Shown piece by piece: positions 358 through 18,691 of a stretch of DNA of 64,000 bases. Each line of letters opens with the position of its first letter. Position 1 is the stretch's first letter. The notes under the pieces were generated by a model. The model made no database searches. It saw only the letters and a program-made list of their open reading frames with translations, and had not been told where the DNA came from. The stretch spans positions 186,001 through 250,000 of the IMG/VR virus record IMGVR_UViG_3300047157_000197, one strand, 5' to 3'. Both the position numbers and the translations under genes were made by a program.

Positions 358-558
358 ATGTCAAAAACCGCATGGTTTTTTAGTAATAGGTTACGAGGGG
401 AATCTCATCCCAGGTCAAAATTAACATCTGAACAAGTAATCCAAATAAGAGAACTTTATTCTAAAGGATTTTCTACTAATGTAATTGCCCGAAACTTCAA
501 AGTATCGGCTTGGAATGTAGAAGAAATTTGTAAAAGAAGAACCTGGACTCATTTATAA
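358..558 (+). CDS. small HTH DNA-binding protein (resembles the C-terminal HTH of phage HNH endonucleases)
   Basis: RGESHPRSKLTSEQVIQIR...IARNFKVSAWNVEEICKRRTW pattern. Confidence 0.6.
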   Translation: MSKTAWFFSNRLRGESHPRSKLTSEQVIQIRELYSKGFSTNVIARNFKVSAWNVEEICKRRTWTHL

Positions 559-571: not shown

Positions 572-1270
572 ATGACAGTTATAGAAGCAACTTCACCTGG
601 TGATGCTTGGGTAAAAGTATCAAAACATTTATTAGAACATGGTGTAAGAGTAGGTAATCTTACAGAAGAACTTAATGTGATTACCGAAATCACAGAATTT
701 AAATCAGATGATTGGTTTGATGGACACTTCAGAGAAATTATGGGAGATGATAGAATTGATTTCGCTAAAACAGTAACCTTTCTTAAACCAGAACAAAAGA
801 AATCAGATAACCCATTCTTTGATGAGGGAGAGGGATTAGATTATAAATTTATTAAAGACCATTACCATCAATCCTATTGGGGTAGAATGGTATCTTGGAG
901 AGGTGAATTTAATCAAATAGAAAATGTAATCAAAATTCTATCAACTGGTAAAGCAGTAAAACGATGTGAACTTATTATTTTTGACCCTAAGAAAGATGCA
1001 AGGAATCCATATTCACAACCTTGTATGGTTATGATTGATTTAAAACCAAGAAATGGTAAATTATATCTAACATCAGTACTTCGTTCAAATAGAGTATCTA
1101 AAAGTGGTTATGCAGATTACACAGCATTAACCGAAATGGGACATTTCCTTGCTGAACAAAGTGGATTAGAATTAGGAAAAGTAACTACCCTCGCTTGTTC
1201 GTGTCATATTGGTGATATGGATAATGAAAAAAAGAAAACAAACAAGTTATTAGAAGTATTAAATAGATAG
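572..1270 (+). CDS. thymidylate-synthase-fold protein, dCMP hydroxymethylase-like (atypical active site)
   Basis: YWGR; catalytic PC; RSNRVSKSGYADY aligns with T4 gp42 RSNDVVFGFRNDY; SCH motif near the C-terminus. Confidence 0.75.
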   Translation: MTVIEATSPGDAWVKVSKHLLEHGVRVGNLTEELNVITEITEFKSDDWFDGHFREIMGDDRIDFAKTVTFLKPEQKKSDNPFFDEGEGLDYKFIKDHYHQSYWGRMVSWRGEFNQIENVIKILSTGKAVKRCELIIFDPKKDARNPYSQPCMVMIDLKPRNGKLYLTSVLRSNRVSKSGYADYTALTEMGHFLAEQSGLELGKVTTLACSCHIGDMDNEKKKTNKLLEVLNR

Positions 1271-1271: not shown

Positions 1272-2777
1272 ATGTGTGGAATCGTGGCAACAATTGGATA
1301 TTCTCGTAATGAGGTAGACGATATGTTAGAAGTTATTTCTCATCGAGGTAAAGATAATAGAGGAATAGAAGAATTTGATTATAATGGTAAAAAAGTATGC
1401 TTAGGACATAATCGTTTATCTATTAATGATATATCTCCTTTAGGCAACCAACCAATGAGTTTTGAAAATACTCACTTAATTGTAAATGGTGAGATTTGGA
1501 ACTACCCACAACTTAGAAAAGAATATGAAGAACGAGGATATATTTTTAAATCATCATCAGATTCGGAAATTATATTATACCTTTATAAAGAAAATGAATT
1601 ACAGAGATTAGATGGAATGTTTTCCTTTGTTATATATGATGATAACAAATTAATATTATCTCGTGATTGGGTTGGTAAAATACCTCTTTACATCTATAAT
1701 ACAAACAAATATATTGTTGCTAGTGAATTAAAATCTATACTTGGATATAATGAAACATCAGATATTAGATTCGTTCCAAAAAACTCATTAGTAGAGATTG
1801 ATTTAGATACTGATGAATTTAAAGTAACTAGCGATTTTTATTTTAAATGGTCATCGGATGTAACAAAACCAAAATCAAGTAAAGAAGTTGGTGAAACCAC
1901 ATTTAAATTATTAGAAAGAGCAGTAGATAAACGATTATTATCAGATGTTCCAATTGCAACATCATTAAGTGGAGGTATTGATTCTGCTATTATAACTTAC
2001 TTACTTAAACAAAGAATACCAAGTATCAAAGCATATACAATTGCATTTGACCAAGATTCAAAAGATTTACAAAAAGCAAGAGTTTGTGCAAAAAGTATTG
2101 ATGTAGAACTTGTTGAGGTATTTGTACCAAAAGATGAAAAAATTATTAAACAGAGATTTTTTGATTCAATTAATGTTATTGAATACCCATCAACTGTACA
2201 AATGGAAGTTGGTATATTACAATCATTTATTGCAGAGGAAATGGTTAAAGATGGAATCAAAGTTGCTTTTAGTGGAGAGGGTTCTGATGAATCATACGGT
2301 TCATATGGAACGTTTAGAATGTTCAGTAAGAAACCAGATTGGAGTGATGTTAGAAAAAACTTATTTGAAAAACAACACTATGGTAATTTATTAAGAGGTA
2401 ATACAATCTTTATGAATTATGGAACAATTGAATTAAGGTGTCCATTCTTTGATACAGAGTTTCTACAATATACAACAAATCTACAAGATGAATTTTTATC
2501 AGATAAAGTACAATGGAAAAAACCACTTGCTGATGCATTTAGAGGAAAGTTACCAGATGAAATATTAGACCAAGAGAAAAGGGCTTTTCAAAAAGGTACA
2601 AACTTTAAAGAATATATCGAAGATATTATTTTGAATGATTCTGAAATAAATTTTAAAAATAGAAAAAAAATGTTTCACGTCATTTGTGATAACTTTGAAA
2701 AAATAAATGGGTTTTCTCACAAAAAACTTAGACAACCAATTACAAATAATAATATAGGAATCTACAAATGGGTATAA
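1272..2777 (+). CDS. asparagine synthetase B-like glutamine amidotransferase
   Basis: N-terminal MCGI Ntn nucleophile, HRG, HNRLSI, NGEIWN, SGGIDS PP-loop, GEGSDE, ELRCPFFD. Confidence 0.9.
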   Translation: MCGIVATIGYSRNEVDDMLEVISHRGKDNRGIEEFDYNGKKVCLGHNRLSINDISPLGNQPMSFENTHLIVNGEIWNYPQLRKEYEERGYIFKSSSDSEIILYLYKENELQRLDGMFSFVIYDDNKLILSRDWVGKIPLYIYNTNKYIVASELKSILGYNETSDIRFVPKNSLVEIDLDTDEFKVTSDFYFKWSSDVTKPKSSKEVGETTFKLLERAVDKRLLSDVPIATSLSGGIDSAIITYLLKQRIPSIKAYTIAFDQDSKDLQKARVCAKSIDVELVEVFVPKDEKIIKQRFFDSINVIEYPSTVQMEVGILQSFIAEEMVKDGIKVAFSGEGSDESYGSYGTFRMFSKKPDWSDVRKNLFEKQHYGNLLRGNTIFMNYGTIELRCPFFDTEFLQYTTNLQDEFLSDKVQWKKPLADAFRGKLPDEILDQEKRAFQKGTNFKEYIEDIILNDSEINFKNRKKMFHVICDNFEKINGFSHKKLRQPITNNNIGIYKWV

Positions 2778-3613
2778 TACAAACACCAATAGAAGAATAT
2801 CAACTTAAAGGTAAAACTGTTTATGTCAAACGAGATGATTTGGTTGGTGATGGTGTAAACTATCCACGATGGGCAAAGGTTGAAGGTATAAGAAAGATTA
2901 TAGAATCAGATTATATTGATAAATCAAAACCACTCACACACCTTTCAGTATATGGAAGTTGGACAGGTTGGACATTATCTAAAATGTGTAAAGAATATGG
3001 TATTGAGTTTATTTCATCATACCCAGATTCTAAAACATATCCACCAGAACTATTAGAAATTATTAAAAGTAATGGGGCAACATTGAATCCAATGAAACCA
3101 AATATGATGAAACTGCTTGAGAATAAATTAGGTGGTATCGCAAAAAAGAATGGTTGGCAACAACTACCATATGCTTTTAATCATCCTACTTACATAAATT
3201 ATATGCAAAATAGAATGAAAGATGTATTAGCAGAACAAGATTTTGACCACCTTGTTGTATCAATTGGTAGTGGTGTAACTGCATCTGGTTTAATTCGAGA
3301 ATTTTTACAATATAAAGATTGGAAAGATATTCTTAATAACAAAAGAAAAGTTCATACAATTACAATGTCTGCAATACATTCTACTCAAAAGATTCTCAAT
3401 GAAAATAAAGCAGGAGATTTAAACAATATTAATATTTACAAATCCCCATTTGAGTTTAATGATTTAATGGAAGATTATTCTGTTCCATTTGATTGTAATG
3501 AATTTTGGGATAAGAAAATGTGGTTTTGGTTAGAAGAAAATATTGAATCACTAGATGGTAAAATACTATTTTGGAACATTGGTGGTTCTTATCAAACATC
3601 ATTAGGATTATGA
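2768..3613 (+). CDS. fold-type II PLP-dependent enzyme (ACC deaminase/D-cysteine desulfhydrase-like)
   Basis: TPIEE...VYVKRDDL...WAK (likely PLP lysine), VVSIGSGVTASGL phosphate loop, C-terminal FWNIGG. Confidence 0.75.
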   Translation: MGIIQTPIEEYQLKGKTVYVKRDDLVGDGVNYPRWAKVEGIRKIIESDYIDKSKPLTHLSVYGSWTGWTLSKMCKEYGIEFISSYPDSKTYPPELLEIIKSNGATLNPMKPNMMKLLENKLGGIAKKNGWQQLPYAFNHPTYINYMQNRMKDVLAEQDFDHLVVSIGSGVTASGLIREFLQYKDWKDILNNKRKVHTITMSAIHSTQKILNENKAGDLNNINIYKSPFEFNDLMEDYSVPFDCNEFWDKKMWFWLEENIESLDGKILFWNIGGSYQTSLGL

Positions 3614-4842
3614 CAAACGGCGAAGATATATTAGCAAAATATAGGAAGGATATATTTGAAGGAGATTTTCCAACAATTTCAGAAAATGATTGGGAAACTT
3701 TAAAAGAATCATATCCAAAAGACCAAGTAAAAGAAATGTTGGCTGAACTTTTTATGGAATATCCAATACCCTATGCAGAAATTAGTGAAGAAAATGCTTA
3801 CAATGATTACCTTAAACTAAAAGCTTTTCGCTGGATAGAATATCTAAAGGAAGGTGAGTGGTTCCCAAGAAAAGCAGCTGAATCAAAATATCCATTAACA
3901 TATAATGGAAAACAACAATTCTTTTCTCGTATTAATACAGGTAATAGGGCATCTAATTACTTTCAACAGCACAACAGATGGTCAGTAGATGGTTCAGTTT
4001 CTCCAGGTCCAAAAAGGACATGGGAAACCAAAGCATTTATGAAATCACTAATGGGTTCAGCTTATTCTTTAAAATTACCACAAGTTGGTAAAAAAGAATT
4101 AAGAACAATGATTGGGTTACGCAAGTACATATGTGCTCAGTTCAAGCCAAATGTAGCCAAGATGTTTTATGATATGAATAATGCCAAGACCGTACTTGAT
4201 TTTTCAATGGGCTGGGGAGATAGGTTAGCAGGGGCTTTCTCAAGCGAAACTGTTGAACATTATGTAGGACTAGACCCTCGTAAAGAGAATCACCCTATCT
4301 ATGAACAACAAAGAGATTTCTATACCAAACATACATCTTTCTTCGAGAACCCAACTAAAACAACGTTCTATGAATCACCAGCAGAAGATTTTGATTACTC
4401 TGAATATAATGAGTACTTTGATATAGTATTTACATCACCTCCATATTTCTCAGTAGAAAGATATTCACATGATGATACTCAAAGTTGGGTAAGATATAAA
4501 AACATTGATGTGTGGAATGAACATTTCTTACATAAGGCACTTGGAAAGATTATACCAACGGTAAAAAAAGGTGGGATAATTGCAGTAAACATAGCTGATG
4601 TATATGCAAGTTCTAAAGGAGGAAAAGATTGGTTAGAAATATGTAATCCAATGATTGATTTCCTAACATCACAAGGATTAACTTACAAAGGTTGTATTGG
4701 TATGGAAATGGCAAAGAGACCTAATAGTGGTGGAGCAGGAACTGCTAAAGATGATGGACAGTATTCAGAGGAAAGTTTAAAATTAGCAGAAGAAACACAA
4801 AATCAAACTTTTTGTGAACCAATTTGGATAATTCAGAAATAA
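3610..4842 (+). CDS. SAM-dependent amino-methyltransferase-like DNA modification enzyme (SPPY type)
   Basis: VLDFSMGWGDR motif I, YVGLDP, FTSPPYF motif IV; ATG at 3610 overlaps the upstream TGA, so it is preferred over the 3571 start. Confidence 0.8.
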   Translation: MTNGEDILAKYRKDIFEGDFPTISENDWETLKESYPKDQVKEMLAELFMEYPIPYAEISEENAYNDYLKLKAFRWIEYLKEGEWFPRKAAESKYPLTYNGKQQFFSRINTGNRASNYFQQHNRWSVDGSVSPGPKRTWETKAFMKSLMGSAYSLKLPQVGKKELRTMIGLRKYICAQFKPNVAKMFYDMNNAKTVLDFSMGWGDRLAGAFSSETVEHYVGLDPRKENHPIYEQQRDFYTKHTSFFENPTKTTFYESPAEDFDYSEYNEYFDIVFTSPPYFSVERYSHDDTQSWVRYKNIDVWNEHFLHKALGKIIPTVKKGGIIAVNIADVYASSKGGKDWLEICNPMIDFLTSQGLTYKGCIGMEMAKRPNSGGAGTAKDDGQYSEESLKLAEETQNQTFCEPIWIIQK

Positions 4843-4878: not shown

Positions 4879-7395
4879 TTGTATCAAAACATTTATTACC
4901 AGAGAGAAAGAAATTTAATCCATTTATGGGATGACCAGAGAGGATATTCTGCATTTCCATATACAAGATATGCGTATGAGAAATCTTTAAGAGGTGAGTA
5001 TAAATCTATTTATGGAGATACACTAACCAAAATTTATAAATTCAAAGGAGATAATCCTGATTTATTTGAATCTGATGTACCCGAAACTACAAGGGCTTTA
5101 GTAGATTTATATTCTGAATCTGATGAACCATCAGAAGGTCATGTTATTCTTACTTATGATATTGAGTGTGAAATGTTAAGTGGATTGCCAGACCCACAAG
5201 AAGCTAAAAACGAATTAACTTCAATTGCACTTCATGATTCAGCAACAAACCAATATTGGGTATTAGTTGTTGATAAGGAAGGTGGTATGAAAGAAAAAAC
5301 TACCGATAAATGTATCGTATTTCCATTTCAAGATGAACGAGATATGTTAATGAAGTATTTGGAATTATATGAAATGATTAATCCATCAATCGTTACAGGT
5401 TGGAATATTGATTATTTCGATACACCAATGTTATACAACAGAATCAAAAGATTATTAGGAGAAAAACATGCTAATAGATTATCACCAATCGGTAAATGTT
5501 TCTGGTCACCATATCGTAAGAGATATTTTATGGCAGGTGTATCTTATTTAGATTATATTGAACTTTATAAGAAATACAACTATGGTGAACTTCCAAACTA
5601 TCGATTAGATACAGTTGCACAAATAGAATTAGGTAGAGGTAAGATTGAATATCAAGGAAACTTAGACCAATTATTCAGAGATGATATTGAAAAGTTCATT
5701 GAGTATAACTTAGTGGATGTTGAATTGGTTGTAGGATTTGAAGAAAAACTTGAATTTATAGATTTATGTAGAGGTATTGCACATGCAGGTCATGTACCTT
5801 ATGAAGATTTTGTATATTCATCAAAGTATCTTGAAGGAGCAATGTTAACATATCTACGAAGAAAAGGATTAGTTGCACCAAACAAACCAGCAGATAGACG
5901 TGAAAGAATGGAAGCTCTTAAAGAATCTGGTTCTGAAAAGTTTATAGGAGCTTATGTAAAAGCACCAATCGTTGGTAAGTATGATTGGATATATGATTTA
6001 GATTTAACATCTCTATATCCATCTATTATTATGACTCTAAATATATCACCAGAAGCAAAAGTTGGAAAAGTTCAAGATTGGGATGCAAATAAGTTTGTTA
6101 AAGGTGAAGTTGATACTTATCGTATTGGTGAAGATACTATCACAAAAGAAAATTTAAAGAAATATTTAGAACAATCTAAATTTTCAATAGCATCAAATGG
6201 TGTACTTTACCGAACAGATAAAGTAGGTTGTATTCCAGGTATTCTAAACTTATGGTTTGATAAAAGGGTAGAATATAAAAACGAAATGAAAAAATATGGA
6301 AAAGCAGGAAACAAAGCAAAATATGCCTTCTTTCACAAACGTCAGTTGGTTCAGAAAATTTTACTTAACTCTTTATATGGTGTGCTTGGGCTTCCTGCCT
6401 TTAGGTTCTATGATGTTGATAATGCTACCGCTGTTACCACGACAGGACAGACAGTTATTAAATCAACTGCGGATATGGCTAATATCAAGTACAACAAGGA
6501 GCTTAATACTCCTGATGCTGACTCTAATATATACATTGATACTGATTCAGTATTTTTCTCAGCAGTTCCTTTAATGGATAAAAGATTTCCTAATTGGAAA
6601 GATGAAGAACAAGATACAATTGCTGGTTATGTAAATGATATTGCAGAAGAAATGCAAGATTATTTAAATGATTTCTATGATATACTTTCAAAAAAAGTTT
6701 TAAATGTAGATAAAGATAAACATAGATTAGAGATTAAAAAAGAATATGTTGCAAAAGCAGGATTGTGGATTGCAAAGAAAAGATATGCACAATGGATTAT
6801 ATCAGATAATGGTGTACCAGTTGATAAGTTAGATGTAAAAGGTTTAGATGTTAAACGAAGTTCGTTTCCAAAAGCATTCCAAGAATGTATGGGTACAGTT
6901 TTGATTGATATTCTAAAAGGTAAATCAGAAGAAGAAATTTCAGATTATGTTTTAGATTTTAAAAAGAAAATGGTAAACAGACCTACATCTGAGATTGCAA
7001 AGAACTCAGCGGTAAAGAATCTTAAAAAATATATGCCGAAAGGTAAGAGAGAACCGTTTACAATGATGAAAGGAACACCTGCCCATGTTAAAGCAGCAAT
7101 CTTATATAATGATTGTTTGAAACATTTCAATGCACCTTTCAAATATGAACCAATGAAAAATGGTGATAAGGTAAAATGGGTATATCTTAAAGATAATCCA
7201 CTAGGAATCGATGGATTAGCATTTAGTGGATATAACGACCCAAAAGAGATAGAAGAATTTATTGCAACATATATTGACTATAATAAAATCTTTGAAAGAG
7301 AATTAAAAGGTAAACTACAAGATTTCTTCGATGCTATTGGTTGGGGAGATGTTGTAAGTGAACAACGAACTGCAGAAAAGTTCTTCAGTTTTTAA
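4879..7395 (+). CDS. family B DNA polymerase (T4 gp43-like)
   Basis: exonuclease YDIE and GWNIDYFD; polymerase DLDLTSLYPS, KILLNSLYG, YIDTDS, KKRY; TTG start. Confidence 0.97.
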   Translation: MYQNIYYQRERNLIHLWDDQRGYSAFPYTRYAYEKSLRGEYKSIYGDTLTKIYKFKGDNPDLFESDVPETTRALVDLYSESDEPSEGHVILTYDIECEMLSGLPDPQEAKNELTSIALHDSATNQYWVLVVDKEGGMKEKTTDKCIVFPFQDERDMLMKYLELYEMINPSIVTGWNIDYFDTPMLYNRIKRLLGEKHANRLSPIGKCFWSPYRKRYFMAGVSYLDYIELYKKYNYGELPNYRLDTVAQIELGRGKIEYQGNLDQLFRDDIEKFIEYNLVDVELVVGFEEKLEFIDLCRGIAHAGHVPYEDFVYSSKYLEGAMLTYLRRKGLVAPNKPADRRERMEALKESGSEKFIGAYVKAPIVGKYDWIYDLDLTSLYPSIIMTLNISPEAKVGKVQDWDANKFVKGEVDTYRIGEDTITKENLKKYLEQSKFSIASNGVLYRTDKVGCIPGILNLWFDKRVEYKNEMKKYGKAGNKAKYAFFHKRQLVQKILLNSLYGVLGLPAFRFYDVDNATAVTTTGQTVIKSTADMANIKYNKELNTPDADSNIYIDTDSVFFSAVPLMDKRFPNWKDEEQDTIAGYVNDIAEEMQDYLNDFYDILSKKVLNVDKDKHRLEIKKEYVAKAGLWIAKKRYAQWIISDNGVPVDKLDVKGLDVKRSSFPKAFQECMGTVLIDILKGKSEEEISDYVLDFKKKMVNRPTSEIAKNSAVKNLKKYMPKGKREPFTMMKGTPAHVKAAILYNDCLKHFNAPFKYEPMKNGDKVKWVYLKDNPLGIDGLAFSGYNDPKEIEEFIATYIDYNKIFERELKGKLQDFFDAIGWGDVVSEQRTAEKFFSF

Positions 7396-7477: not shown

Positions 7478-8191
7478 ATGGAAAAACAATCATTAAACAG
7501 GTTTGTATCAAAATACAACCTCGCAGGTTTAGTAGAATCTGTAAAGTGGGAATCAAAAGATGGTTCTCTAACTACTTCTTTTATTTCTGATGATAAATCA
7601 GTATTAGGAAGTGTAAGTATGAAAGAGTTTGATACTTCAGATGCATCTTTTGGTGTATATGATACTTCAAAACTTACAAAAATGTTATCAGTTCTTGGTA
7701 ACGATGTAGATTTCTCAATCAATGATATTGATGGGAAACCAGTTTCTTTGAAATTCAAAGATGGTTCAACAAATGTAAATTATATGTTAGCTGATTTATC
7801 AGTTATCCCTAATGTACCAGATTTGAAACAATTACCACCATTCAATGTGGAAATTAAATTAGATGCAAACTTTATCTCAAAGTTTATTAAAGCAAAAGGT
7901 GCTTTAGCTGATGAGAATAACTTTACATTTACTTGTAAAGATGGTGCTGGTCAAATTATTTTAGGTTATTCAAATATTAACACAAACAGAATTAACATAG
8001 ATGTTGACTGTACTTGTGAAAAAGATGTTGACCCAATTTCTTTTTCGGCAACATACTTAAAAGAGATACTAGTTGCAAACAAAGAGGCTACTGATGCAAT
8101 TTTAAAGATTTCATCTCAAGGATTATCACATATCTCTTTTTCAATCGATAACTACGAATCAAATTATTATTTAGTAGAAATACAAGCTTAA
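7478..8191 (+). CDS. sliding clamp (gp45/PCNA-like)
   Basis: 237 aa, FGVYDTSKL and YMLAD resemble T4-like gp45; adjacent to the polymerase. Confidence 0.8.
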   Translation: MEKQSLNRFVSKYNLAGLVESVKWESKDGSLTTSFISDDKSVLGSVSMKEFDTSDASFGVYDTSKLTKMLSVLGNDVDFSINDIDGKPVSLKFKDGSTNVNYMLADLSVIPNVPDLKQLPPFNVEIKLDANFISKFIKAKGALADENNFTFTCKDGAGQIILGYSNINTNRINIDVDCTCEKDVDPISFSATYLKEILVANKEATDAILKISSQGLSHISFSIDNYESNYYLVEIQA

Positions 8192-9828
8192 TGAGTGATA
8201 AACACTTTTACGAAAGAAGTAAGTTTTCCGAGTTTAAATCCAATACTACTTATCATCAGTTGTTAGAAATGACTGATGATGAGTTTGTGGTATGGGCTCG
8301 TTTACTCCGTAAAGAGGTTACTACACAATGGGATGAAAGAGGAACTCCACCAGTAATTGGTAGAGATGAAGATGGTATTATTGAAAAGTTTAAGAAACTT
8401 AAATCTAATCCATCTAATTATTGGATTAAAGATGTAACTGATGATACAGAATCATTGGGTATCATTAAAAACTTTAATAAAGATGCATCAGTTGTAAATC
8501 AGTTTTTTCCTACAATGTTAAAAACTAAGATATCAACAGGTAAATCTGCAGATGGTGGTTTATCTATTTATGACCATTTTTCAGACCCTACGTTAGAAGA
8601 TAAGTTTGTTAAAATAATGAAACGAGCAGTTAAAAGAGATTCAATGTACTCTTGGTCTCGTTCAATTGTTGATAAGAAAGATGAAAATCCTTTTTGGACT
8701 GGACAAAATATAGTTCAATTTGTAAAAGATGTTCATAATGATAAAGTTTTTAAAGGAAAATATAAAAATTTAAGTATTGTTCTTGCAAAGGCTAAATCAT
8801 CTACATTAGAAAATTATGGTACATTCAATGAAGAGTTTGTTGGATATGGTAATTTGTATATGTCTGCAGATGAAGTGAATAAATTAGTTGATGAGGGGTA
8901 TTTAAATACAACTCAAACTTCTAATTTAGGTGAGATAGTTGATTCAACAACATCTGATGCAGGAACTGTTACTACTTATAAATATTTAATTCGTTGGTAT
9001 GATAAAACAGATGGTATCTTTCCAAAAATATTACAAGTATTTAGATTAAGTTGTGGACAACCAGCAGTAAACTTCCCAGCATTAACTGCTAAATGGATTT
9101 ATGAAAACTATACTAAACATATAGATGATGATGAACCATTACATATTTATGATTCATCAAGTGGTTGGGGTGGTAGAATCTTAGGAGCAATGAGTTCTCG
9201 TAAGAAAATTCACTATGTTGGTACAGACCCTAATCCTGATAACTTCTTAAATGAAGAAGGTATTTCTCGTTATGAGTACATGGCTAAGTTTTATAATGAT
9301 AATTGTGTAGATGATTATTCAGATAAACTTACATCATTCTTTGATGTAACACCACAAGGTAACACCTATGAGTTATTTCAAAATGGTTCAGAATTAATCT
9401 CAAACAATCCTAAGTTTCAAAAGTATAAAGGTAAATTAGATATTTCATTTACTTCACCTCCTTACTTTAATAGAGAACAATATTCACAAGATGAGAATCA
9501 ATCGTTCAAAGCTTATGGTGAATATGAAGATTGGAGAGATAACTTTTTAAGACCTACTCTAACAACAATCTATGAATATCTTAAAAACGATAGATATATA
9601 CTATGGAATATTGCAGATATTAAAATCGGTAAATCAATTTACTATCCATTAGAACAAGATTCAATTGATATCTTAAATGAATTAGGTTGTGAATATAAAG
9701 GTAAACTTAAAATGTTAATGACACGAATGGTTGGATTAGACCCATCTAAGAGTGGAATAAAAAATTCAGTTCAATACGAAGGAAAGGCATATAAATTTGA
9801 ACCAATCTTCGTTTTTTATAAACCTTAA
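8191..9828 (+). CDS. second SPPY-type methyltransferase-like DNA modification enzyme
   Basis: NFPALTAK, YDSSSGWGGR, YVGTDP, FTSPPYFNREQYS; paralogue of 3610-4842 including the C-terminal EPIF/EPIW. Confidence 0.8.
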   Translation: MSDKHFYERSKFSEFKSNTTYHQLLEMTDDEFVVWARLLRKEVTTQWDERGTPPVIGRDEDGIIEKFKKLKSNPSNYWIKDVTDDTESLGIIKNFNKDASVVNQFFPTMLKTKISTGKSADGGLSIYDHFSDPTLEDKFVKIMKRAVKRDSMYSWSRSIVDKKDENPFWTGQNIVQFVKDVHNDKVFKGKYKNLSIVLAKAKSSTLENYGTFNEEFVGYGNLYMSADEVNKLVDEGYLNTTQTSNLGEIVDSTTSDAGTVTTYKYLIRWYDKTDGIFPKILQVFRLSCGQPAVNFPALTAKWIYENYTKHIDDDEPLHIYDSSSGWGGRILGAMSSRKKIHYVGTDPNPDNFLNEEGISRYEYMAKFYNDNCVDDYSDKLTSFFDVTPQGNTYELFQNGSELISNNPKFQKYKGKLDISFTSPPYFNREQYSQDENQSFKAYGEYEDWRDNFLRPTLTTIYEYLKNDRYILWNIADIKIGKSIYYPLEQDSIDILNELGCEYKGKLKMLMTRMVGLDPSKSGIKNSVQYEGKAYKFEPIFVFYKP

Positions 9829-10050: not shown

Positions 10051-12759
10051 ATGAGAAAACTATTATTAGTTGGATTGATGCTCTTAATGAGTATCACTAC
10101 TTTTGCACAAATTAGTGGAAAAGTAATTGACAGCGAAACTAATGACCCTCTACCAGGAGCAACCATTATCGTTCAAGGAACGGCGGATGGAACTGTAACT
10201 GGTTTTGATGGAACATTTAGTATCGATGTTGAAGAAGGAACAATTCTTATTGTTTCTTACTTGGGTTATGAAACTGCTGAAATTTCAGCTGGTATTGATT
10301 CGGATATTATAGGATTATATCCTGATTTGAATCAACTAGGTGAAGTAGTAGTAACTTCTGGTGTAATTGATATTGCAAAGGTAAGAACAACTCCGGTTGC
10401 TGTATCTACAATTTCACCTGCAGAAATTGCTTTAAAAGTAGGTAACCAAGAGTTTCCTGAAATCATGAACAAAACTCCAGGAGTTTACGCTACCAAACAA
10501 GGTGGTGGTTATGGTGATTCAAGAATCTCTTTAAGAGGATTCGACCAAAGAAACACATCATTCCTTATCAATGGGCAACCAGTAAATGATATGGAAAATG
10601 GATGGGTATATTGGTCTAACTGGCAAGGTTTAACAGATGTTGCGAGTGGAATCCAATTACAAAGAGGCCTTGGTGCTTCAAGATTAGCAGTACCATCAGT
10701 AGGTGGTACTGTTTCTATTTTTACAAAGGCTGCAGAAGCTAAAAAGGGCTCATCTATACAACAATCAGTTGGTAACGATGGATACTTTAAAACTACTGCA
10801 GCAGTATCAACAGGATTAAATGATAATGGGTGGGCTACATCTGTGTTACTTTCTAAGTGGCAAGGTGATGGTTATATCTATAACACAAAAGGAGAGGGTT
10901 ACACTTACTTCTTTGCGTTAGGATATGCACCTGAAGATTCAGACCATTCTGTTAACTTTTCTTTCTTAGGTGCTGGACAATGGCATCATCAAAGAGATGT
11001 ATGGGTTTCTATTAGAGATTACCAAAACTTTGGTAGTGAAGGAATCGATAGAAGATGGAATTCCAATGGTGGTGTTTTAAATGGTGAAGAATTCTCAATG
11101 AGAAGAAACTTCTATAACAAACCATTAGCAACATTAAATTGGGATTGGGAAATCAACGATAACCTTAAACTAGCTACATCATTATATGGTTCAGCTGGTA
11201 GAGGTGGTGGAACAGGACCAAGAGGTAGAAATTACTACAACTCGGAAACTGATATCTTACCTTTCAGAAAAGACCTTACAGAACACTACTTAGAAAATGG
11301 TAGAGGTTCAAGAACTCCTGAAGGATTTATTGATTTTGATGCAGTTGTTGCATTTAACCAATCAAACACAGACCCATATAGTGGTGATTTACCATTTGCT
11401 GGTCAGTTAATTGGTTCTAATGGATTCCAAGATGATGGTGTTAATAGAAGTGCACTTGTAAGAAGAGCATCTATGAACTCTCATGACTGGGTTGGAGCAA
11501 TTTCTAACTTAGAATATGAAAGTGGTGATTGGAAATACTCAATAGGAGTAGATTTAAGAAACTACACAGGTTATCATTATAGAACTATAAATAACCTAAT
11601 GGGATTAGATGGATATTACTCAACGGGTAATAAGAATTCTGCTGGTCAGATTATCAACACTACAATCGAAGCTTCTCCGTTCAATGATACAGGTATCAGA
11701 GGACCGAAGATAGATTATTATAATGTTGGTAAAGTTGGATGGCAAGGATTAAATGGTTTAGTTGAATATAACAACGAAACTATTTCAGCTGTATTACAAG
11801 TAGGTGGTTCTAATCAATCTTTCCAAAGAATTGATTACTTTGACCAACCAGGTAATCCAGAATCAGATACTAAGAATGTAGATGGTGGATACATCAAAGG
11901 TGGTGCAAACTACAATATTGATGAGAAACAAAACGTATTCTTTAATGCTGGTGTGATTTCAAGACAACCACAATTCGGTGCTGTATTCCCTAACTATGGA
12001 AATGCAATCAACGAAGATTTACAAAACGAAGAAATTAAATCATTCGAATTAGGATATGGTTTCATTGGTAGTAACTTTAAAGTTAATGTTAATGCATATT
12101 CAACAGTATGGGGTAATAGATTCGTTCAAAGAAGTTTATCTAACCAACAAGGTGTAGATGGTTCAGCTCAATTTAAAGATATCGATGTATCACACAAAGG
12201 TATTGAAATTGAAACTTCTTATAACCCAACAGATAAGTTGAGATTAAAAGGTATGTTATCAATCGGTGATTGGAAATATACTAAAGATTTCGATGCAGAA
12301 TTATTTGATGATAATCAACAATCAATCGGTACAGGTACATTATACCTAAAAGATGCTAAGGTAGGAGATGCTGCTCAGTTCACATCTTACTTCGAGGCGG
12401 ATTACCAAGTATTCGATAAACTAAGAGTTGATTTAGGATATAGATTTGTTGATGGATTATATGCTGATTATTCAATTACAGATTCAGAATTTACTCAACC
12501 TGGTAACAAGGGAGCTTTAAAATTACCATCTTATGGATTGGCTGATTTAGGAGCAACTTACAGATTTGATTTATTCGGAAATAGTAGTTCGTTTAGAGTT
12601 AATGTAAATAACTTGTTTGATACTTACTACATAGCAGAATCTAATACTAATATTCATGCTGGAGATGCTTCAGAAACATGGAATGGTGTAGATACAAGAA
12701 ACTCAGTATGGTTCGGATTCGGACGTACTTTCAATGCTTCTCTAAAAGTAAGATTCTAA
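10051..12759 (+). CDS. TonB-dependent outer-membrane receptor
   Basis: signal peptide ending TFA-Q; CarboxypepD_reg-like N-domain (ISGKVIDSETNDPLPGATI); plug (EVVVT, SLRGF, LINGQP); barrel with NNLFD..Y and terminal Phe. Confidence 0.93.
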   Translation: MRKLLLVGLMLLMSITTFAQISGKVIDSETNDPLPGATIIVQGTADGTVTGFDGTFSIDVEEGTILIVSYLGYETAEISAGIDSDIIGLYPDLNQLGEVVVTSGVIDIAKVRTTPVAVSTISPAEIALKVGNQEFPEIMNKTPGVYATKQGGGYGDSRISLRGFDQRNTSFLINGQPVNDMENGWVYWSNWQGLTDVASGIQLQRGLGASRLAVPSVGGTVSIFTKAAEAKKGSSIQQSVGNDGYFKTTAAVSTGLNDNGWATSVLLSKWQGDGYIYNTKGEGYTYFFALGYAPEDSDHSVNFSFLGAGQWHHQRDVWVSIRDYQNFGSEGIDRRWNSNGGVLNGEEFSMRRNFYNKPLATLNWDWEINDNLKLATSLYGSAGRGGGTGPRGRNYYNSETDILPFRKDLTEHYLENGRGSRTPEGFIDFDAVVAFNQSNTDPYSGDLPFAGQLIGSNGFQDDGVNRSALVRRASMNSHDWVGAISNLEYESGDWKYSIGVDLRNYTGYHYRTINNLMGLDGYYSTGNKNSAGQIINTTIEASPFNDTGIRGPKIDYYNVGKVGWQGLNGLVEYNNETISAVLQVGGSNQSFQRIDYFDQPGNPESDTKNVDGGYIKGGANYNIDEKQNVFFNAGVISRQPQFGAVFPNYGNAINEDLQNEEIKSFELGYGFIGSNFKVNVNAYSTVWGNRFVQRSLSNQQGVDGSAQFKDIDVSHKGIEIETSYNPTDKLRLKGMLSIGDWKYTKDFDAELFDDNQQSIGTGTLYLKDAKVGDAAQFTSYFEADYQVFDKLRVDLGYRFVDGLYADYSITDSEFTQPGNKGALKLPSYGLADLGATYRFDLFGNSSSFRVNVNNLFDTYYIAESNTNIHAGDASETWNGVDTRNSVWFGFGRTFNASLKVRF

Positions 12760-12826: not shown

Positions 12827-13372
12827 ATGAGTAAATTAATAAACCTCTTCGGTGGACCTGGTATTGGGAAATCCTCAATAGCAAATGGTATCACTTACAA
12901 ACTCAAAAAGAAACATATAAGTTGTAACAATCCTTATGAATTCCCAAAGAAATTAGCTTGGGACCAAAACATACCAGCAATATCAGACCAACTTTATGTA
13001 TTTGCAAACCAACATAGAGGAATAGCAGAATGTTATGGTAAAGTAGATTATATAGTGATTGATTCACCAATTATGTTTTCTACAATTTATCATAGATATT
13101 ATACAAAAGGATATCCTGCTGAATTTTATGGAGAACCTTTCCATAATTTAGTTATTGATTTACATAGAAAATATGATAGTATCAATATCTTATTAGAACG
13201 AGGTGAAACAATACACAATGATGATGAACGATTCCAAGATTATCAGCAATCACTAGAAATTGATAAATTGTGTAAAAAAATATTAGAAGAAAACAAAATT
13301 CCTTACCATACAATTAAGGTTGATGGTAAAACAGTAAAAAAAGTTATGAAATTATTAGGAAATACCAAATAA
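12827..13372 (+). CDS. P-loop kinase/ATPase (NadR/AAA_28-like), possible nucleotide kinase
   Basis: INLFGGPGIGKS Walker A, YIVIDSP, ERFQ. Confidence 0.7.
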   Translation: MSKLINLFGGPGIGKSSIANGITYKLKKKHISCNNPYEFPKKLAWDQNIPAISDQLYVFANQHRGIAECYGKVDYIVIDSPIMFSTIYHRYYTKGYPAEFYGEPFHNLVIDLHRKYDSINILLERGETIHNDDERFQDYQQSLEIDKLCKKILEENKIPYHTIKVDGKTVKKVMKLLGNTK

Positions 13373-15086: not shown

Positions 15087-15536
15087 ATGGCTAAATCTTT
15101 ATTTGACCACATAAAGGCAGTAACACAATTTCAAGACCCAAAGTATTGGGATAAACTTGAAGATAGTGATAAGAAAACTTGGAGTAACTATATGGTACAT
15201 CGTTTTCTTTCTATGAATTCCGATTGGATACAAGTTCTTTCTGAGATACAACCATATACTCAAACATTAGAACCTAAGCAGTTATATCTTGCCTTAATTG
15301 GATTAATTCCAAAAGGTAGGTATTATTTAAAATATACTAAAGGAAAGCGAGAAACTAAATATGAAAGTTTTTTATTAGAACTGATTATTCAAGATTTTCA
15401 ATGTTCTTCATTAGAAGCGTTTGATTATTGTGAAATCCTTTATTCAACAAAAGAAGGTAGAGAAAATATCAAATATATGTGTGAGAAATATGGTATTGAT
15501 AAAAAACAAATTACAAAATTAAAATTAAAGGTATGA
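15087..15536 (+). CDS. clamp loader small subunit (gp62-like)
   Basis: LFDHIKAV...NYMVHRFLSM...IPKGRYYLKY pattern; near the gp44-like gene. Confidence 0.7.
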   Translation: MAKSLFDHIKAVTQFQDPKYWDKLEDSDKKTWSNYMVHRFLSMNSDWIQVLSEIQPYTQTLEPKQLYLALIGLIPKGRYYLKYTKGKRETKYESFLLELIIQDFQCSSLEAFDYCEILYSTKEGRENIKYMCEKYGIDKKQITKLKLKV

Positions 15537-16780: not shown

Positions 16781-16812
16781 TTAGGATTTCTCATTTATTT
16801 TTCGTATATTTA
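16781..16812 (+). promoter_or_regulatory. Bacteroidota-type promoter variant
   Basis: TTAG-N20-TATATTTA. Confidence 0.65.
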
Positions 16813-16835
16813 CATAGTAAATAAAACATAAAAGT

Positions 16836-17693
16836 ATGGCAAGAGTAAGTTATTCACAGTATGGTATGTATAGTTCATGCCAACAACAATACAAATTAAA
16901 TTATATAGATAAGTTGGGTATTAGTAATGCTAATATTCATCTTATTTTTGGTTCTGCAATGCACGAAGTAGTACAACATTTCTTAGATGTAATGTATAAT
17001 GTTACTAAAAAACAGGCATTACAACTAAACCTAGAAGAGATGTTACATTCTAAACTTGTAGAACATTTCATGAAGTACAAAGATAAGATGGGTGAAGATG
17101 ACCCATGTACCCAAGCAGAACTTGGTGAGTTCTTTGAAGATGGTAAGAAAATCTTAAAATACTTCACAAGTAAATTAGATAAGTTATACACTAAAAGTGG
17201 ATTTGAACTCATAGCAATAGAACAGAGATTGAATGCTGAGATTAAACCTGGTGTTAACTTCATTGGTTTTATTGATGTACTTTTAAAAGATAAAGTTAAA
17301 GATGAATACATTATCATTGATTTAAAAACTGCTACAAGAGGTTGGAGTAAGTATCAAAAGAATGATAAGGTTAAAACATCACAGATGTTACTATATAAGA
17401 AGTTCTATTCTGAAAAGTATAACATACCTTTAAACAAAATTAAAGTAGAATATCAGATACTTAAACGAAAGATTGCAGAAGGATTGGATTATCCAATACC
17501 AAGAATATCTAAGTTCGTTCCTGCAAATGGTACTCCATCTATGAATATGGCTTGGAAAAACTTTATGGGATTTGTTGATTCTGTATTTGGTGAGAATGGT
17601 GAGATAATACAAACCGAGTTTCCTACTAATAAAGGTAAACCTTGTGATTGGTGTGAGTTCAAACAACGAGGATTGTGTTCTGCATGGACTTAA
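16836..17693 (+). CDS. PD-(D/E)XK exonuclease (AddB/Cas4-like, Fe-S)
   Basis: SYSQ..C, FGSAMH, GFIDV, IIDLKT, QMLLY, C-terminal CDWC...C. Confidence 0.88.
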   Translation: MARVSYSQYGMYSSCQQQYKLNYIDKLGISNANIHLIFGSAMHEVVQHFLDVMYNVTKKQALQLNLEEMLHSKLVEHFMKYKDKMGEDDPCTQAELGEFFEDGKKILKYFTSKLDKLYTKSGFELIAIEQRLNAEIKPGVNFIGFIDVLLKDKVKDEYIIIDLKTATRGWSKYQKNDKVKTSQMLLYKKFYSEKYNIPLNKIKVEYQILKRKIAEGLDYPIPRISKFVPANGTPSMNMAWKNFMGFVDSVFGENGEIIQTEFPTNKGKPCDWCEFKQRGLCSAWT

Positions 17694-17703
17694 AATAAAA
17701 TAG

Positions 17704-18267: not shown

Positions 18268-18324
18268 CTCCTGTTTTATATATATTCATATATTTATATG
18301 TAATAACAATTAAAAAGGAGAGTT

Positions 18325-18519: not shown

Positions 18520-18536
18520 AAAAAGAAAAAAACAAA

Positions 18537-18671: not shown

Positions 18672-18691
18672 AATTTTTAAAATAAAGGTTA

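What the first reader, a model, noticed from the sequence alone, without database searches (positions are those of the whole stretch)
1010..1220. TS-fold enzyme has the dCMP-specifying Asp but has lost conserved folate- and sugar-binding residues
Seen: PC...RSNRVSKSGYADY...SCHIGD. By-eye alignment to E. coli ThyA (RSCDVFLGLPFN...HLY) and T4 gp42 (RSNDVVFGFRNDY...HVY) gives three points. The catalytic Cys is kept. The Asn177-equivalent is Asp, the established cytosine-specificity determinant. The near-invariant RSxD Asp that contacts the folate pterin is Arg, and the HxY Tyr that binds the 3'-OH is Gly. Inference: the enzyme activates cytosine C5 but may use a non-folate, anionic co-substrate (for example an aldehyde or keto acid from the adjacent PLP enzyme), or act on a 3'-substituted/polymeric substrate.
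Basis: partly seen in the sequence, partly recalled or inferred. Interest (0 to 1): 0.72.

Follow-up and report, generated by a model that had tools for sequence, protein, structure and literature searches.

The report
Remodelled thymidylate-synthase-like enzyme in phage cytosine-modification cassette
A marine jumbo phage encodes a thymidylate-synthase-fold enzyme that keeps the catalytic cysteine and the cytosine-specifying aspartate but has replaced the folate-contacting aspartate by an obligatory arginine, and it always sits in a conserved four-enzyme gene cassette that probably builds a cytosine DNA modification that has not yet been described.

Summary
ORF 572..1270 (232 aa) is a confident TS fold.

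New findings:
- In 89 distinct clade members, Cys, Asp182 and His212 never vary and Asp169 is never present.
- Exactly one Arg sits either at 174 (with a non-Arg at 214; 66 sequences) or at 214 (with Ala at 174; 23 sequences). It switched at least twice on the tree.
- The R21 loop and the folate-closing C-terminal tail are missing, and R127 is not conserved.
- The gene is always followed by a PP-loop amidotransferase or ligase (AsnB-like or a short form). A fold-II PLP enzyme and/or a B12-type radical SAM enzyme comes next; the radical SAM enzyme is fused to the TS domain in one case. One to six SPPY methyltransferase-like genes lie alongside.
- The genome has a separate canonical ThyA.

The closest solved structures are the flavin-dependent dCMP hydroxylase AfhB and MilA, but their defining residues are not met.

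Verdict: this is the entry enzyme of an uncharacterised, widespread phage cytosine hypermodification pathway that probably does not use folate in the canonical way. The chemistry is inferred.

The parts
572..1270 (+). TS-fold enzyme, 232 aa. It belongs to the clade with motif RSx[R/A]xSK[S/A]GY[A/G]D[Y/F].
   Evidence: Pfam PF00303 28.6 bits. AF2 pLDDT 94. Foldseek top hits are AfhB 9iqu/9iqc and MilA. Alignments.
1022..1024 (+). Codon of Cys151, the catalytic nucleophile (E. coli Cys146)
   Evidence: Invariant in 89 clade sequences. Aligned to Cys146 of ThyA and Cys148 of gp42.
1091..1093 (+). Codon of Arg174, at the Asp169 position (the folate pterin contact in ThyA)
   Evidence: R in 66 and A in 23 of 89 clade members, never D.
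1115..1117 (+). Codon of Asp182, at the Asn177 position (pyrimidine specificity determinant; Asp means cytosine)
   Evidence: Invariant in the clade. The Asn177Asp rule is taken from PMC8670742 and PMC13326640.
1205..1213 (+). His212-Ile-Gly214, equivalent to His207-x-Tyr209. Position 214 carries the Arg in clade members that have Ala174.
1272..2777 (+). AsnB-like glutamine-dependent PP-loop amidotransferase, 501 aa, with N-terminal Cys2 and an SGGIDS PP-loop. It starts 2 nt after the TS-like stop.
   Evidence: Pfam Asn_synthase and GATase_7. TIGR01536 284 bits against a cut-off of 267. 1ct9 E 3e-39. Syntenic after the TS-like gene in relatives, or swapped for a 290-308 aa PP-loop-only enzyme.
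2768..3613 (+). Fold-type II PLP enzyme, 281 aa, a distant relative of ACC deaminase / D-Cys desulfhydrase. Lys37 is the predicted Schiff-base lysine.
   Evidence: PALP 31.3 bits. phrog_7093. Invariant K37 and the GSGVT loop. The profile aligns K37 to the PLP Lys region of 1J0A.
3610..4842 (+). SPPY amino-methyltransferase-like protein A, 410 aa. An N-terminal domain of about 170 aa of unknown function is followed by a Rossmann MTase with motif I LDFSxGWGDR and motif IV FTSPPYF.
   Evidence: Weak N6_N4_Mtase hit. Conserved motifs in 14 orthologues. AF2 pLDDT 88. The nearest solved fold is the Trm11 m2G tRNA MTase. Present in 33 of 33 loci with both flanks.
8191..9828 (+). SPPY methyltransferase-like protein B, 545 aa, a paralogue of A. 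In many relatives it lies immediately upstream of the TS-like gene.
   Evidence: tblastn 29% to MT-like A. 65% to L070:2093-3727, which abuts the TS-like gene there. The MTb-TS-AsnB-PLP order is seen in L078-L094.
12827..13372 (+). Candidate nucleotide kinase, 181 aa. Its membership of the pathway is tentative.
   Evidence: Pfam AAA_28. phrog_2107 'thymidylate kinase'.
4879..7395 (+). Family B DNA polymerase, given as context. The cassette occupies the position that gene 42 holds next to gene 43 in T4.
   Evidence: ORF list. T4 gene order 42-imm-43. 32% identity to the L066 polymerase.

Best explanation
ORF 572..1270 encodes an active thymidylate-synthase-fold enzyme that acts on a cytosine nucleotide, most likely dCMP. 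It works by covalent catalysis: Cys151 adds to C6 and Asp182 handles N3/N4. This activates the ring for substitution.

Unlike ThyA, T4 gp42 and MilA, it has given up the canonical folate-binding mode. Asp169 is lost in the whole clade, the C-terminal lid is absent, and pocket residues are replaced by Ser-Lys-Ser-Gly-Tyr. It carries one obligatory arginine whose side chain can come from position 174 or from position 214. I infer that this arginine binds an anionic group, a carboxylate or phosphate, on the second substrate or on the nascent side chain.

The enzyme is the entry step of a conserved phage cassette. The next gene is always a PP-loop ATPase of the asparagine-synthetase family. I infer that it adenylates and amidates a carboxylate on the product. 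A fold-II PLP enzyme and/or a B12-type radical SAM enzyme supplies or remodels an amino-acid-like side chain. One or more SPPY amino-methyltransferases N-methylate the product or the DNA. The expected end result is a hypermodified cytosine in phage DNA that protects it from host nucleases.

What is shown: the fold, the register, the residue conservation, the Arg toggle, the cassette synteny, and the separate canonical ThyA. What is inferred: the substrate, the cofactor, the chemistry of each step, and whether the steps happen before or after replication.
For: Fold and register.

Clade signature:
- C151, D182 and H212 are invariant in 89 distinct sequences.
- Positions (174, 214) are (R, non-R) in 66 sequences and (A, R) in 23. 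They are never D, never both Arg and never neither.
- At least two coordinated switches are needed on an ML tree whose key node has 97/98 support.
- The nearest outgroup has D174+R214, and more distant short TSs have D174/N182/Y214.
- Asp169 lies within 6 A of C5 of dUMP in ThyA (PMC13326640).

Cassette:
- Of 47 distinct TS-like genes with at least 4.5 kb downstream, 46 have a PP-loop enzyme and 47 have PLP and/or radical SAM.
- 33 of 33 loci with both flanks have the MT-like gene.
- There is a TS::radical-SAM fusion, P0125, 676 aa.
- AsnB-like and short PP-loop forms are swapped between relatives whose TS-like proteins are 93% identical.
- Stops and starts overlap or abut in the window.
- The same cassette is found in three Ignavibacteria/Kapaibacterium MAG contigs.

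Other evidence:
- It is not the phage's dTMP synthase: a canonical ThyA (316 bits) and a dCMP deaminase lie elsewhere in the genome.
- Precedent for Asp169 substitution marking a cofactor switch: PMC13326640 and PDB 9iqu/9iqc.
- Contigs from seawater metatranscriptome libraries bridge the TS/AsnB junction. DNA carry-over is not excluded.
Against: - No biochemical datum exists for any clade member.
- The Arg could have a different role. It could polarise O2 of cytosine, as the RxR arginine does in DNA C5-methyltransferases. It could also bind a 3'-phosphate.
- The spatial closeness of residues 174 and 214 is inferred from the covariation and from published TS structures. It was not measured on coordinates.
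- No dCTPase (MazG, PRA-PH, NUDIX, dUTPase, dUTPase_2) and no T4 gp1/gp56 homologue was found in this complete genome. A T4-style full pre-replicative replacement is therefore not backed by the gene set.
- The MT-like/PLP/AsnB module also occurs without an adjacent TS-like gene (L066, L068). The module is therefore not strictly dependent on this enzyme.
- The AsnB-like protein scores above the generic asparagine-synthase model cut-off, so it could be a plain asparagine synthetase.
Confidence: 0.45

Rival explanations
1. It is an ordinary folate-dependent dCMP hydroxymethylase or methylase of the T4 gp42 or MilA type with a drifted pocket. The neighbouring enzymes, or the nearby glycosyltransferases, tailor 5hmC afterwards.
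For: - MilA is the best sequence match among solved structures (E 4e-6).
- Asp is present at the Asn177 position.
- A small polar Ser148 sits at the Leu143 position, so water could reach a methylene intermediate.
- The gene sits beside the DNA polymerase, as gene 42 does in T4.
- A candidate nucleotide kinase and two GT4 glycosyltransferases lie within 20 kb.
Against: - Asp169 is absent from all 89 clade members, but gp42, MilA and most other short TS homologues keep it.
- Hydroxymethylases have Asp/Glu at the Leu143 position (PMC13326640); here it is S/G/R/K/L.
- The Tyr209 and R21 loop equivalents are lost.
- The glycosyltransferases are not part of the cassette in relatives.
Confidence: 0.22
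2. It is a flavin-dependent dCMP 5-hydroxylase like RB69 gp48, DLP3 gp80 or HY126 AfhB.
For: - The top Foldseek hits are 9iqu and 9iqc (E 4e-12).
- It is of similar short length.
- Asp169 is lost, Asn177 is Asp and Tyr209 is lost. AfhB has HVF at that place.
Against: - The diagnostic residue of that branch is Asn at position 169 (PMC13326640). Here it is Arg or Ala, with a compensating Arg214.
- Sequence identity is only 17-18%.
- No sugar-nucleotide pathway or DNA glycosyltransferase is linked to the cassette in relatives.
- The PP-loop, PLP and radical SAM partners have no role in that pathway.
Confidence: 0.1
3. The enzyme works on cytosine in a polymer or on a 3'-phosphorylated nucleotide. 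The toggling Arg replaces Tyr209 to bind a 3'-phosphate.
For: - The 3'-OH binder Tyr209, the Arg21 loop and Arg127 are lost.
- An Arg sits at or next to the Tyr209 site.
- No dCTPase was detected.
- Arrays of 3-6 MT-like paralogues in some phages suggest sequence-specific steps at the DNA level.
Against: - No TS-fold enzyme is known to act on a polymer. In known TS structures the active site is a closed pocket at the dimer interface.
- The equivalents of Arg166, Ser167 and Lys126 for a 5'-phosphate are invariant.
- The window protein is mildly acidic (pI 6.4).
Confidence: 0.1
4. The Cys-C6 adduct is used for exchange at C4, not for chemistry at C5. This would be bisulfite-like transamination that gives an N4-substituted cytosine carrying an amino acid, whose carboxylate is held by the Arg and then amidated.
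For: - It needs no one-carbon cofactor, which fits the lost folate site.
- It explains the need for an anion-binding Arg and for a carboxylate-amidating partner.
- The SPPY motif of the MT-like proteins is the type that handles exocyclic amino groups such as N4 of cytosine.
Against: This is purely chemical reasoning with no enzymatic precedent in the TS fold. Tyr102 (=Tyr94, the C5 proton abstraction residue) stays invariant, which argues for C5 chemistry.
Confidence: 0.07
5. It is a decayed or non-catalytic TS paralogue.
For: Several canonical TS residues are missing.
Against: The catalytic Cys, Arg166, Ser167, Tyr94, His207 and Asp182 equivalents are invariant across sequences down to 35% identity. 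There is strong purifying selection and strict operon synteny.
Confidence: 0.02

Closest known systems
T4 gp42 deoxycytidylate hydroxymethylase, and MilA CMP hydroxymethylase (PDB 5b6d/5jnh)
   Same: TS fold, catalytic Cys, and Asp at the Asn177 position, which gives cytosine specificity. The Arg166/Ser167 and His207 equivalents are shared. In T4 the gene sits next to the replicative polymerase.
   Different: Both keep Asp169 (RSND / RAND) and Tyr209 (HVY / HIY), have an acidic residue at the Leu143 position, and use methylene-THF. The window protein has Arg174, Gly214 and Ser148, and lacks the R21 loop. Identity is about 14-18%.
Flavin-dependent 5-hydroxy-dCMP synthases (RB69 gp48, DLP3 gp80, HY126 AfhB; PDB 9iqu/9iqc; PMC13326640)
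   Same: They are short TS-fold enzymes of phages in which loss of Asp169 goes with abandoning folate. Asn177 is Asp and Tyr209 is not Tyr. They are the best structural match.
   Different: Their signature is Asp169Asn; here the position is Arg or Ala together with an Arg at 214. Their partners are dNMP kinase, sugar-nucleotide enzymes and glycosyltransferases, not PP-loop, PLP, radical SAM and SPPY-MTase enzymes.
Archaeal-type short thymidylate synthases (TIGR03283; M. jannaschii MJ0757-like)
   Same: They are the nearest relatives overall. They are about 210-225 aa, have the same N-terminal architecture and lack the long C-terminal tail.
   Different: They keep Asp169, Asn177, Tyr209 and the Arg126-Arg127 pair. 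The window protein scores 79.7 bits against a cut-off of 174.6.
Thymidine hypermodification pathways of phages (5-hmdU kinase, amino acid:DNA transferase, PLP decarboxylase, radical SAM isomerase; PMC5889632, PMC8989533)
   Same: The logic is shared: a TS homologue supplies a modified pyrimidine, and PLP and radical SAM enzymes remodel an appended amino acid. Amidotransferases are noted there as uncharacterised associates.
   Different: Those pathways act on uracil/thymine and need a P-loop DNA kinase and an aGPT-Pplase. Neither was seen in this cassette. Here the base is predicted to be cytosine and the TS homologue itself is atypical.
Diphthamide biosynthesis (Dph2 radical SAM ACP transfer, Dph5 N-methylation, Dph6 PP-loop amidation)
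   Same: It uses the same set of enzyme classes: a radical SAM enzyme, a methyltransferase and an ATP-dependent PP-loop amidating enzyme. Together they build an amidated, N-methylated amino-acid side chain on a heterocycle. This is an analogy of logic only.
   Different: The proteins are not homologous beyond the superfamily level. The substrate there is a protein histidine. The comparison comes from established knowledge and was not tested here.

Membership tests
Canonical thymidylate synthase ThyA (EC 2.1.1.45) | TS fold and a Pfam PF00303 match above the gathering score | tested here: met
   28.6 bits against 24.3. AF2 and Foldseek probability 1.00 to many TS chains.
Canonical thymidylate synthase ThyA (EC 2.1.1.45) | Asn177, which selects dUMP | tested here: not met
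   Asp182.
Canonical thymidylate synthase ThyA (EC 2.1.1.45) | Asp169 contacting the folate pterin, and a C-terminal lid over the folate | tested here: not met
   Arg174 is at that position, and the protein ends about 18 residues after His212.
Canonical thymidylate synthase ThyA (EC 2.1.1.45) | A score above the cut-off of the NCBIfam equivalog models | tested here: not met
   NF002495 17.5 bits against 327, and TIGR03283 79.7 against 174.55. The genome has a true ThyA elsewhere (316 bits).
dCMP/CMP hydroxymethylase (T4 gp42, MilA) | Catalytic Cys plus Asp at position 177 | tested here: met
   C151 and D182.
dCMP/CMP hydroxymethylase (T4 gp42, MilA) | Asp169 retained (folate-dependent) and an acidic residue at the Leu143 position | tested here: not met
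   R174 and S148. The clade has R/A at 174 and S/G/R/K/L at 148.
dCMP/CMP hydroxymethylase (T4 gp42, MilA) | Makes 5-hydroxymethyl-(d)CMP from methylene-THF | not testable with these tools
   Needs an enzyme assay.
Flavin-dependent 5-hydroxy-dCMP synthase (AfhB / RB69 gp48) | The Asp169Asn signature | tested here: not met
   Arg (or Ala) in all 89 clade members, never Asn. The signature is taken from PMC13326640.
Flavin-dependent 5-hydroxy-dCMP synthase (AfhB / RB69 gp48) | Closest structural similarity | tested here: met
   9iqu and 9iqc are ranks 1-2, E 4e-12, TM 0.63-0.67.
Flavin-dependent 5-hydroxy-dCMP synthase (AfhB / RB69 gp48) | Binds FMN/FAD and uses O2 | not tested
A biochemical test is needed.
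Phage pyrimidine hypermodification gene cluster (general kind) | A TS homologue co-located with tailoring enzymes, in the replication or nucleotide-metabolism module, conserved across phages | tested here: met
   Cassette tallies of 46/47, 47/47 and 33/33. Gene orders. Flanked by RNR, polymerase, clamp and clamp loader.
Phage pyrimidine hypermodification gene cluster (general kind) | A modified base demonstrated in virion DNA | not testable with these tools
   Only Illumina-derived contigs are available for the runs that hold this phage.

The most novel reading that the evidence does not exclude
The clade is a third cofactor class of the thymidylate synthase superfamily, after the folate and flavin classes. 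The Cys-C6 adduct of dCMP is coupled to a carboxylate-bearing, amino-acid-derived unit. The donor would be a PLP-aminoacrylate or a radical-SAM-derived fragment, or the coupling would be by exchange at C4. The toggling Arg holds the carboxylate. The product is then amidated by the PP-loop enzyme and N-methylated, which gives a cationic, diphthamide-like cytosine hypermodification in the DNA of abundant marine and freshwater jumbo phages.
Probability: 0.2. Interest if true: 0.9.

Novelty: new variant of a known kind. Interest (0 to 1): 0.74.

Why it matters
TS homologues are the gateway to most pre-replicative pyrimidine modifications in phages. Residue signatures at positions 143, 169 and 177 are now used to predict which modified base a phage makes. 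This clade has a signature that none of the published rules covers: Asp177, no Asp169, and one arginine at 169 or 209.

The clade is abundant. More than 190 sequence clusters were found, it occurs in Tara and other seawater and lake metagenomes, and it is present in metatranscriptome libraries. It is locked to a distinctive enzyme set (PP-loop amidotransferase, PLP and/or radical SAM enzyme, SPPY methyltransferases).

If characterised, it would probably reveal a new cytosine hypermodification. It might also reveal a new way of using the TS fold without folate. That would have consequences for phage-host arms races, for interpreting viromes, and for enzymatic DNA-labelling tools. The Arg toggle gives a simple mutational test.

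Tried and rejected
1. Cultured phages. A megablast of 12 kb and a tblastn of the protein against 50,697 phage records found no close relative. The best matches are 25-29% identical 'thymidylate synthase' genes of Enterococcus, Gordonia and Bacillus phages.
2. Complex prediction. TS-like dimer plus PLP enzyme scored 0.23 against a mark of 0.32, which is no answer either way.
3. Arg position versus partner type. I looked for a correlation between the Arg position (174 or 214) and the PLP/radical-SAM or AsnB/short-PP-loop choice. There is none; all combinations occur.
4. The 353-aa protein in the 'TS slot' of the L066 cassette. I tested whether it is a hidden TS homologue. hhalign probability is 0.1% and there is no Pfam, PHROG or PDB hit.
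5. T4 gp56 dCTPase and gp1 dNMP kinase homologues (tblastn), and the MazG, dUTPase, Tmk, PRA-PH, NUDIX and dUTPase_2 families. None was found. Only an AAA_28 kinase-like ORF turned up.
6. An orthologue of the cassette radical SAM enzyme in this genome. None exists; there are only weak superfamily-level hits and an unrelated rSAM-SPASM gene.
7. Literature searches for this enzyme combination found no description.
8. Raw-read evidence for base modification. All runs that hold the phage are kept as Illumina-derived contigs, so nothing can be read from them.
9. The Glu58 and Trp80/Trp83 equivalents could not be assigned.
Full report
**What is there**

The window is bases 186001-250000 of a 275,970-bp virus record that CheckV rates as complete. 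Its G+C content is 30.5%. The finding lies in ORF 572..1270 (+), 232 aa.

- The protein matches Pfam Thymidylat_synt just above the gathering score (28.6 against 24.3 bits, residues 100-215) and two PHROG 'thymidylate synthase' families.
- An AlphaFold2 model built on 84 homologues is confident (mean pLDDT 94, pTM 0.91).
- Foldseek matches it to TS-fold chains with probability 1.00. The first two hits are the phage HY126 dCMP hydroxylase AfhB (9iqu, 9iqc). The next five are chains of the CMP hydroxymethylase MilA.
- Among reviewed proteins, the best matches are the 209-223 aa 'putative thymidylate synthases' of methanogens.
- The NCBIfam model for that archaeal type scores 79.7 bits, far below its cut-off of 174.55.

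**Check of the observation**

- phmmer aligns RSNRVSKSGYADY...SCHIGD to MilA RANDAFRGAVSDV...SVHIYD, to E. faecalis TS RSADVFLGVPFN...DAHL, and to AfhB RSQNCAVVMQLDF...SAHVFE.
- MAFFT with E. coli ThyA and T4 gp42, both taken from public records, gives the same columns.
- The equivalences are C151=Cys146, R171/S172=Arg166/Ser167, R174=Asp169, D182=Asn177, H212=His207 and G214=Tyr209. The codon coordinates are 1022-1024, 1091-1093, 1115-1117 and 1205-1213.

The same alignment shows further changes.

- Lys130-Arg131 stand at Arg126-Arg127.
- Ser148 stands at Leu143, Met152 at His147, Leu170 at Gln165 and Tyr102 at Tyr94.
- There is a five-residue deletion where ThyA has the Arg21 phosphate loop.
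- There is no counterpart of the roughly 45 C-terminal residues of ThyA.
- The N-terminal half aligns inconsistently to the two references, so I do not assign Glu58 or Trp80/83.

In 150 close relatives (70-100% identity, only 29% of columns invariant), C151, R174, D182, H212 and G214 never vary. The unusual residues are therefore maintained by selection.

**The family and the arginine toggle**

An exhaustive HMMER search of 1.84 billion representatives found 415 proteins at E<=0.001 but only 15 at E<=1e-30. A profile search and two scans of IMG/VR added more members.

- The clade that contains the window protein has the motif RSx[R/A]xSK[S/A]GY[A/G]D[Y/F].
- In 89 distinct sequences, down to about 35% identity, Cys151, Asp182 and His212 are invariant and position 174 is never Asp.
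- Positions 174 and 214 are coupled without exception. There are 66 sequences with Arg174 and G/H/A/F/T/K/S at 214, and 23 sequences with Ala174 and Arg214.
- Two identical MAG copies, found afterwards and not in this count, have Arg174/Asp214.
- On a maximum-likelihood tree, the Ala/Arg state occupies a basal group and also a trio nested inside a clade with 97/98 support that is sister to Arg/x sequences. A further Arg/x group lies outside that clade. At least two coordinated double changes are therefore needed.
- The nearest outgroup sequences have Asp174 with Arg214. More distant short TSs have Asp174, Asn182 and Tyr214, and roughly 50 of the 64 non-clade sequences in the table keep the Asp.

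I read this as one guanidinium that must occupy a fixed place between the cofactor site and the sugar 3'-OH site, and that can be supplied from either neighbouring position. Asp169 is one of twelve residues within 6 A of C5 of dUMP in E. coli ThyA (PMC13326640). That the two side chains can reach the same spot is my inference. I could not read model coordinates.

**Genomic context**

The gene lies in the replication and nucleotide-metabolism module.

- Upstream are gp32-like SSB, RecA/UvsX, a 5'-3' exonuclease, DnaB, and RNR small and large subunits.
- Downstream are a family B polymerase, a clamp-like protein, clamp-loader subunits and more.

Directly after the TS-like gene, with abutting or overlapping stops and starts, come three genes.

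- An AsnB-like amidotransferase (1272..2777). It has N-terminal Cys2 and an SGGIDS PP-loop, scores 284 bits on TIGR01536, and matches 1ct9 at E 3e-39.
- A fold-II PLP enzyme (2768..3613). Its invariant Lys37 and GSGVT loop align to the PLP lysine and phosphate loop of the ACC-deaminase homologue 1J0A.
- A 410-aa protein (3610..4842) with an unknown N-terminal domain and a Rossmann methyltransferase domain. The domain carries conserved motif I (LDFSxGWGDR) and motif IV (FTSPPYF). Its model is nearest to Trm11, an m2G tRNA methyltransferase.

A 545-aa paralogue of this last protein lies at 8191..9828.

**Conservation of the cassette**

I tabulated neighbours in all fetched loci.

- Among 47 distinct TS-like genes with at least 4.5 kb of downstream sequence, 46 have a PP-loop enzyme next to them. 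All 47 have the PLP enzyme and/or a B12-type radical SAM enzyme.
- All 33 loci with both flanks have at least one MT-like gene.
- The PP-loop slot holds either the full glutamine-dependent form or a 284-308 aa PP-loop-only form. The two are exchanged even between phages whose TS-like proteins are 93% identical.
- The radical SAM enzyme is nearest to PhpK/ArsL/AprD4-type models. It is fused to the TS-like domain in a 676-aa protein.
- Three loci carry both radical SAM and PLP genes.
- Some jumbo phages carry three to six MT-like paralogues round the cassette.
- The same order, MT-like, TS-like, short PP-loop, radical SAM, occurs on three contigs of Ignavibacteria/Kapaibacterium-type MAGs. These were the only hits among 185,579 species genomes.
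- The MT-like/PLP/AsnB module also exists without an adjacent TS-like gene in a T4-like marine phage group and in another Tara contig. There it is joined by a 2-hydroxyacid dehydrogenase and MazG or an amidohydrolase.

**What it is not**

- The genome has a canonical ThyA (316 bits) and a dCMP deaminase elsewhere. This protein is therefore not the phage's dTMP synthase.
- It fails the defining residues of the hydroxymethylases, which are Asp169, an acidic residue at position 143, and Tyr209.
- It fails the defining residue of the flavin-dependent 5-hydroxy-dCMP synthases, which is Asp169Asn (PMC13326640).
- It is not a decayed copy.

**Mechanism, with its limits**

The following is shown.

- A TS fold with the nucleophile, the 5'-phosphate pair Arg171/Ser172, Tyr102, His212 and the cytosine-type Asp182 all under strict constraint.
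- A pocket in which the folate-contacting Asp is gone and a single Arg is obligatory.
- Strict linkage to a carboxylate-activating PP-loop enzyme, to PLP and/or radical SAM enzymes, and to amino-group methyltransferase-like proteins.

The following is inferred.

- The enzyme forms the Cys-C6 adduct of a cytosine nucleotide and couples the activated ring to a partner other than methylene-THF bound in the canonical way.
- The Arg binds an anionic group of that partner or of the product.
- The PP-loop enzyme then amidates a carboxylate.
- The PLP and radical SAM enzymes supply or reshape an amino-acid-like side chain.
- The SPPY proteins N-methylate it, or N-methylate the base.

The enzyme classes parallel diphthamide synthesis: radical SAM transfer, methylation and PP-loop amidation. 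This is an analogy from established knowledge, not a result obtained here.

Other roles for the Arg remain possible. It could polarise O2 of cytosine, as in DNA C5-methyltransferases. It could bind a 3'-phosphate of a polymeric or bisphosphate substrate. It could support exchange at C4.

The absence of any recognisable dCTPase or T4-type dNMP kinase leaves open whether the modification is made before or after replication. Only an AAA_28 kinase-like ORF was found. The four window proteins are mildly acidic (pI 5.6-6.4). This fits small-molecule enzymes better than DNA binders, but it decides nothing.

The specific suggestion of an aldehyde or keto acid from the PLP enzyme is not supported.

- The PLP enzyme is dispensable in many relatives with the same active site.
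- The Arg position does not follow the partner type.
- The complex prediction was uninformative.

The polymeric-substrate alternative is neither supported nor excluded.

**Distribution and expression**

- The close family alone comprises more than 190 clusters at 90% identity, from JGI, ENA, Logan and Tara assemblies.
- The 4.3-kb cassette is held almost word for word by at least 14 seawater or viral metagenome runs.
- Six metatranscriptome libraries hold 51-78% of its sampled words.
- Contigs from three of those libraries bridge the TS/AsnB junction. DNA carry-over in RNA libraries cannot be excluded.

**Novelty**

No paper in the searchable library describes this enzyme combination or this residue signature. 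I rate it a new variant of a known kind: a phage pyrimidine hypermodification cluster seeded by a TS homologue. There is a realistic chance that the TS-fold chemistry itself is new.

Noticed in passing
window 10051-12759 (+): A 902-aa TonB-dependent receptor of SusC type (CarboxypepD_reg, Plug and beta-barrel domains) is encoded inside the phage replication module. It is an unusual auxiliary gene. Together with the Ignavibacteria/Kapaibacterium MAG hits, it hints at a host in the Bacteroidota/FCB group.
   Followed up: partly
window 3610-4842; relatives L005, L007, L008: The MT-like gene evolves much faster than its neighbours. In the same loci it is 62-66% identical, against 92-95% for the TS-like protein and 86-88% for the polymerase. 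Metagenome and metatranscriptome contigs break or diverge at about 3590-3720 and 4276-4620. This suggests diversifying selection or cassette swapping in this gene.
   Followed up: partly
L072-L076, L137 (IMG/VR jumbo phages of 108-375 kb): Three to six tandem paralogues of the SPPY MT-like protein surround the TS-like/PP-loop/PLP core. This resembles an array of enzymes with different specificities.
   Followed up: no
L013, L015, L018, L024-L035 compared with L005-L012 (PLP gene after the AsnB-like gene): Among close relatives the PLP gene comes in two alleles, about 77-92% and about 44-49% identical to the window's, while the flanking genes stay 78-95% identical. This indicates replacement of the gene by recombination.
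   Followed up: no
L066/L067 6598-12533; L068 7085-11504: The MT-like, PLP and AsnB-like genes also occur without an adjacent TS-like gene. In a T4-like marine phage they sit next to the polymerase with a 353-aa protein of unknown fold, a 2-hydroxyacid dehydrogenase and MazG. On a Tara contig they sit with an amidohydrolase and a 2-hydroxyacid dehydrogenase.
   Followed up: partly
window 15533-21616 (+): A radical SAM-SPASM protein, a PD-(D/E)XK nuclease, a 2OG-Fe(II) oxygenase and two GT4 glycosyltransferases follow the clamp loader. They could belong to a second DNA or surface modification system. They are not linked to the cassette in relatives.
   Followed up: no
L048 10430-11426 (genome 182430-183429, just upstream of the window): A 196-aa class I methyltransferase and a 140-aa SET-domain protein are wedged between the small and large RNR subunit genes.
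   Followed up: no
L057 6766-9361 and 13937-16580: In one relative, an IS605-type TnpB gene and an HNH/PvuRts1I-like gene are inserted on either side of the TS-like gene. The nearby RecA gene carries intein-like segments.
   Followed up: no
L054 1-4259: Four consecutive genes with the ADP-ribosyltransferase exotoxin-type domain (PF03496) lie upstream of the cassette in another phage. They probably act in host takeover like ModA/ModB, but this was not examined.
   Followed up: no
P0152 and Atlas clusters: Many short TS homologues outside this clade are fused to pterin-binding DUF4346 or MtrA-like domains. This suggests that short TSs often receive their pterin cofactor from a separate domain. 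The window's clade has no such domain.
   Followed up: no
window 358-558 (+): A 66-aa helix-turn-helix ORF lies just upstream of the TS-like gene. It resembles the DNA-binding domains of homing and HNH endonucleases (phrog_20467 and phrog_6156). It may be a remnant of a mobile endonuclease or a small regulator.
   Followed up: no
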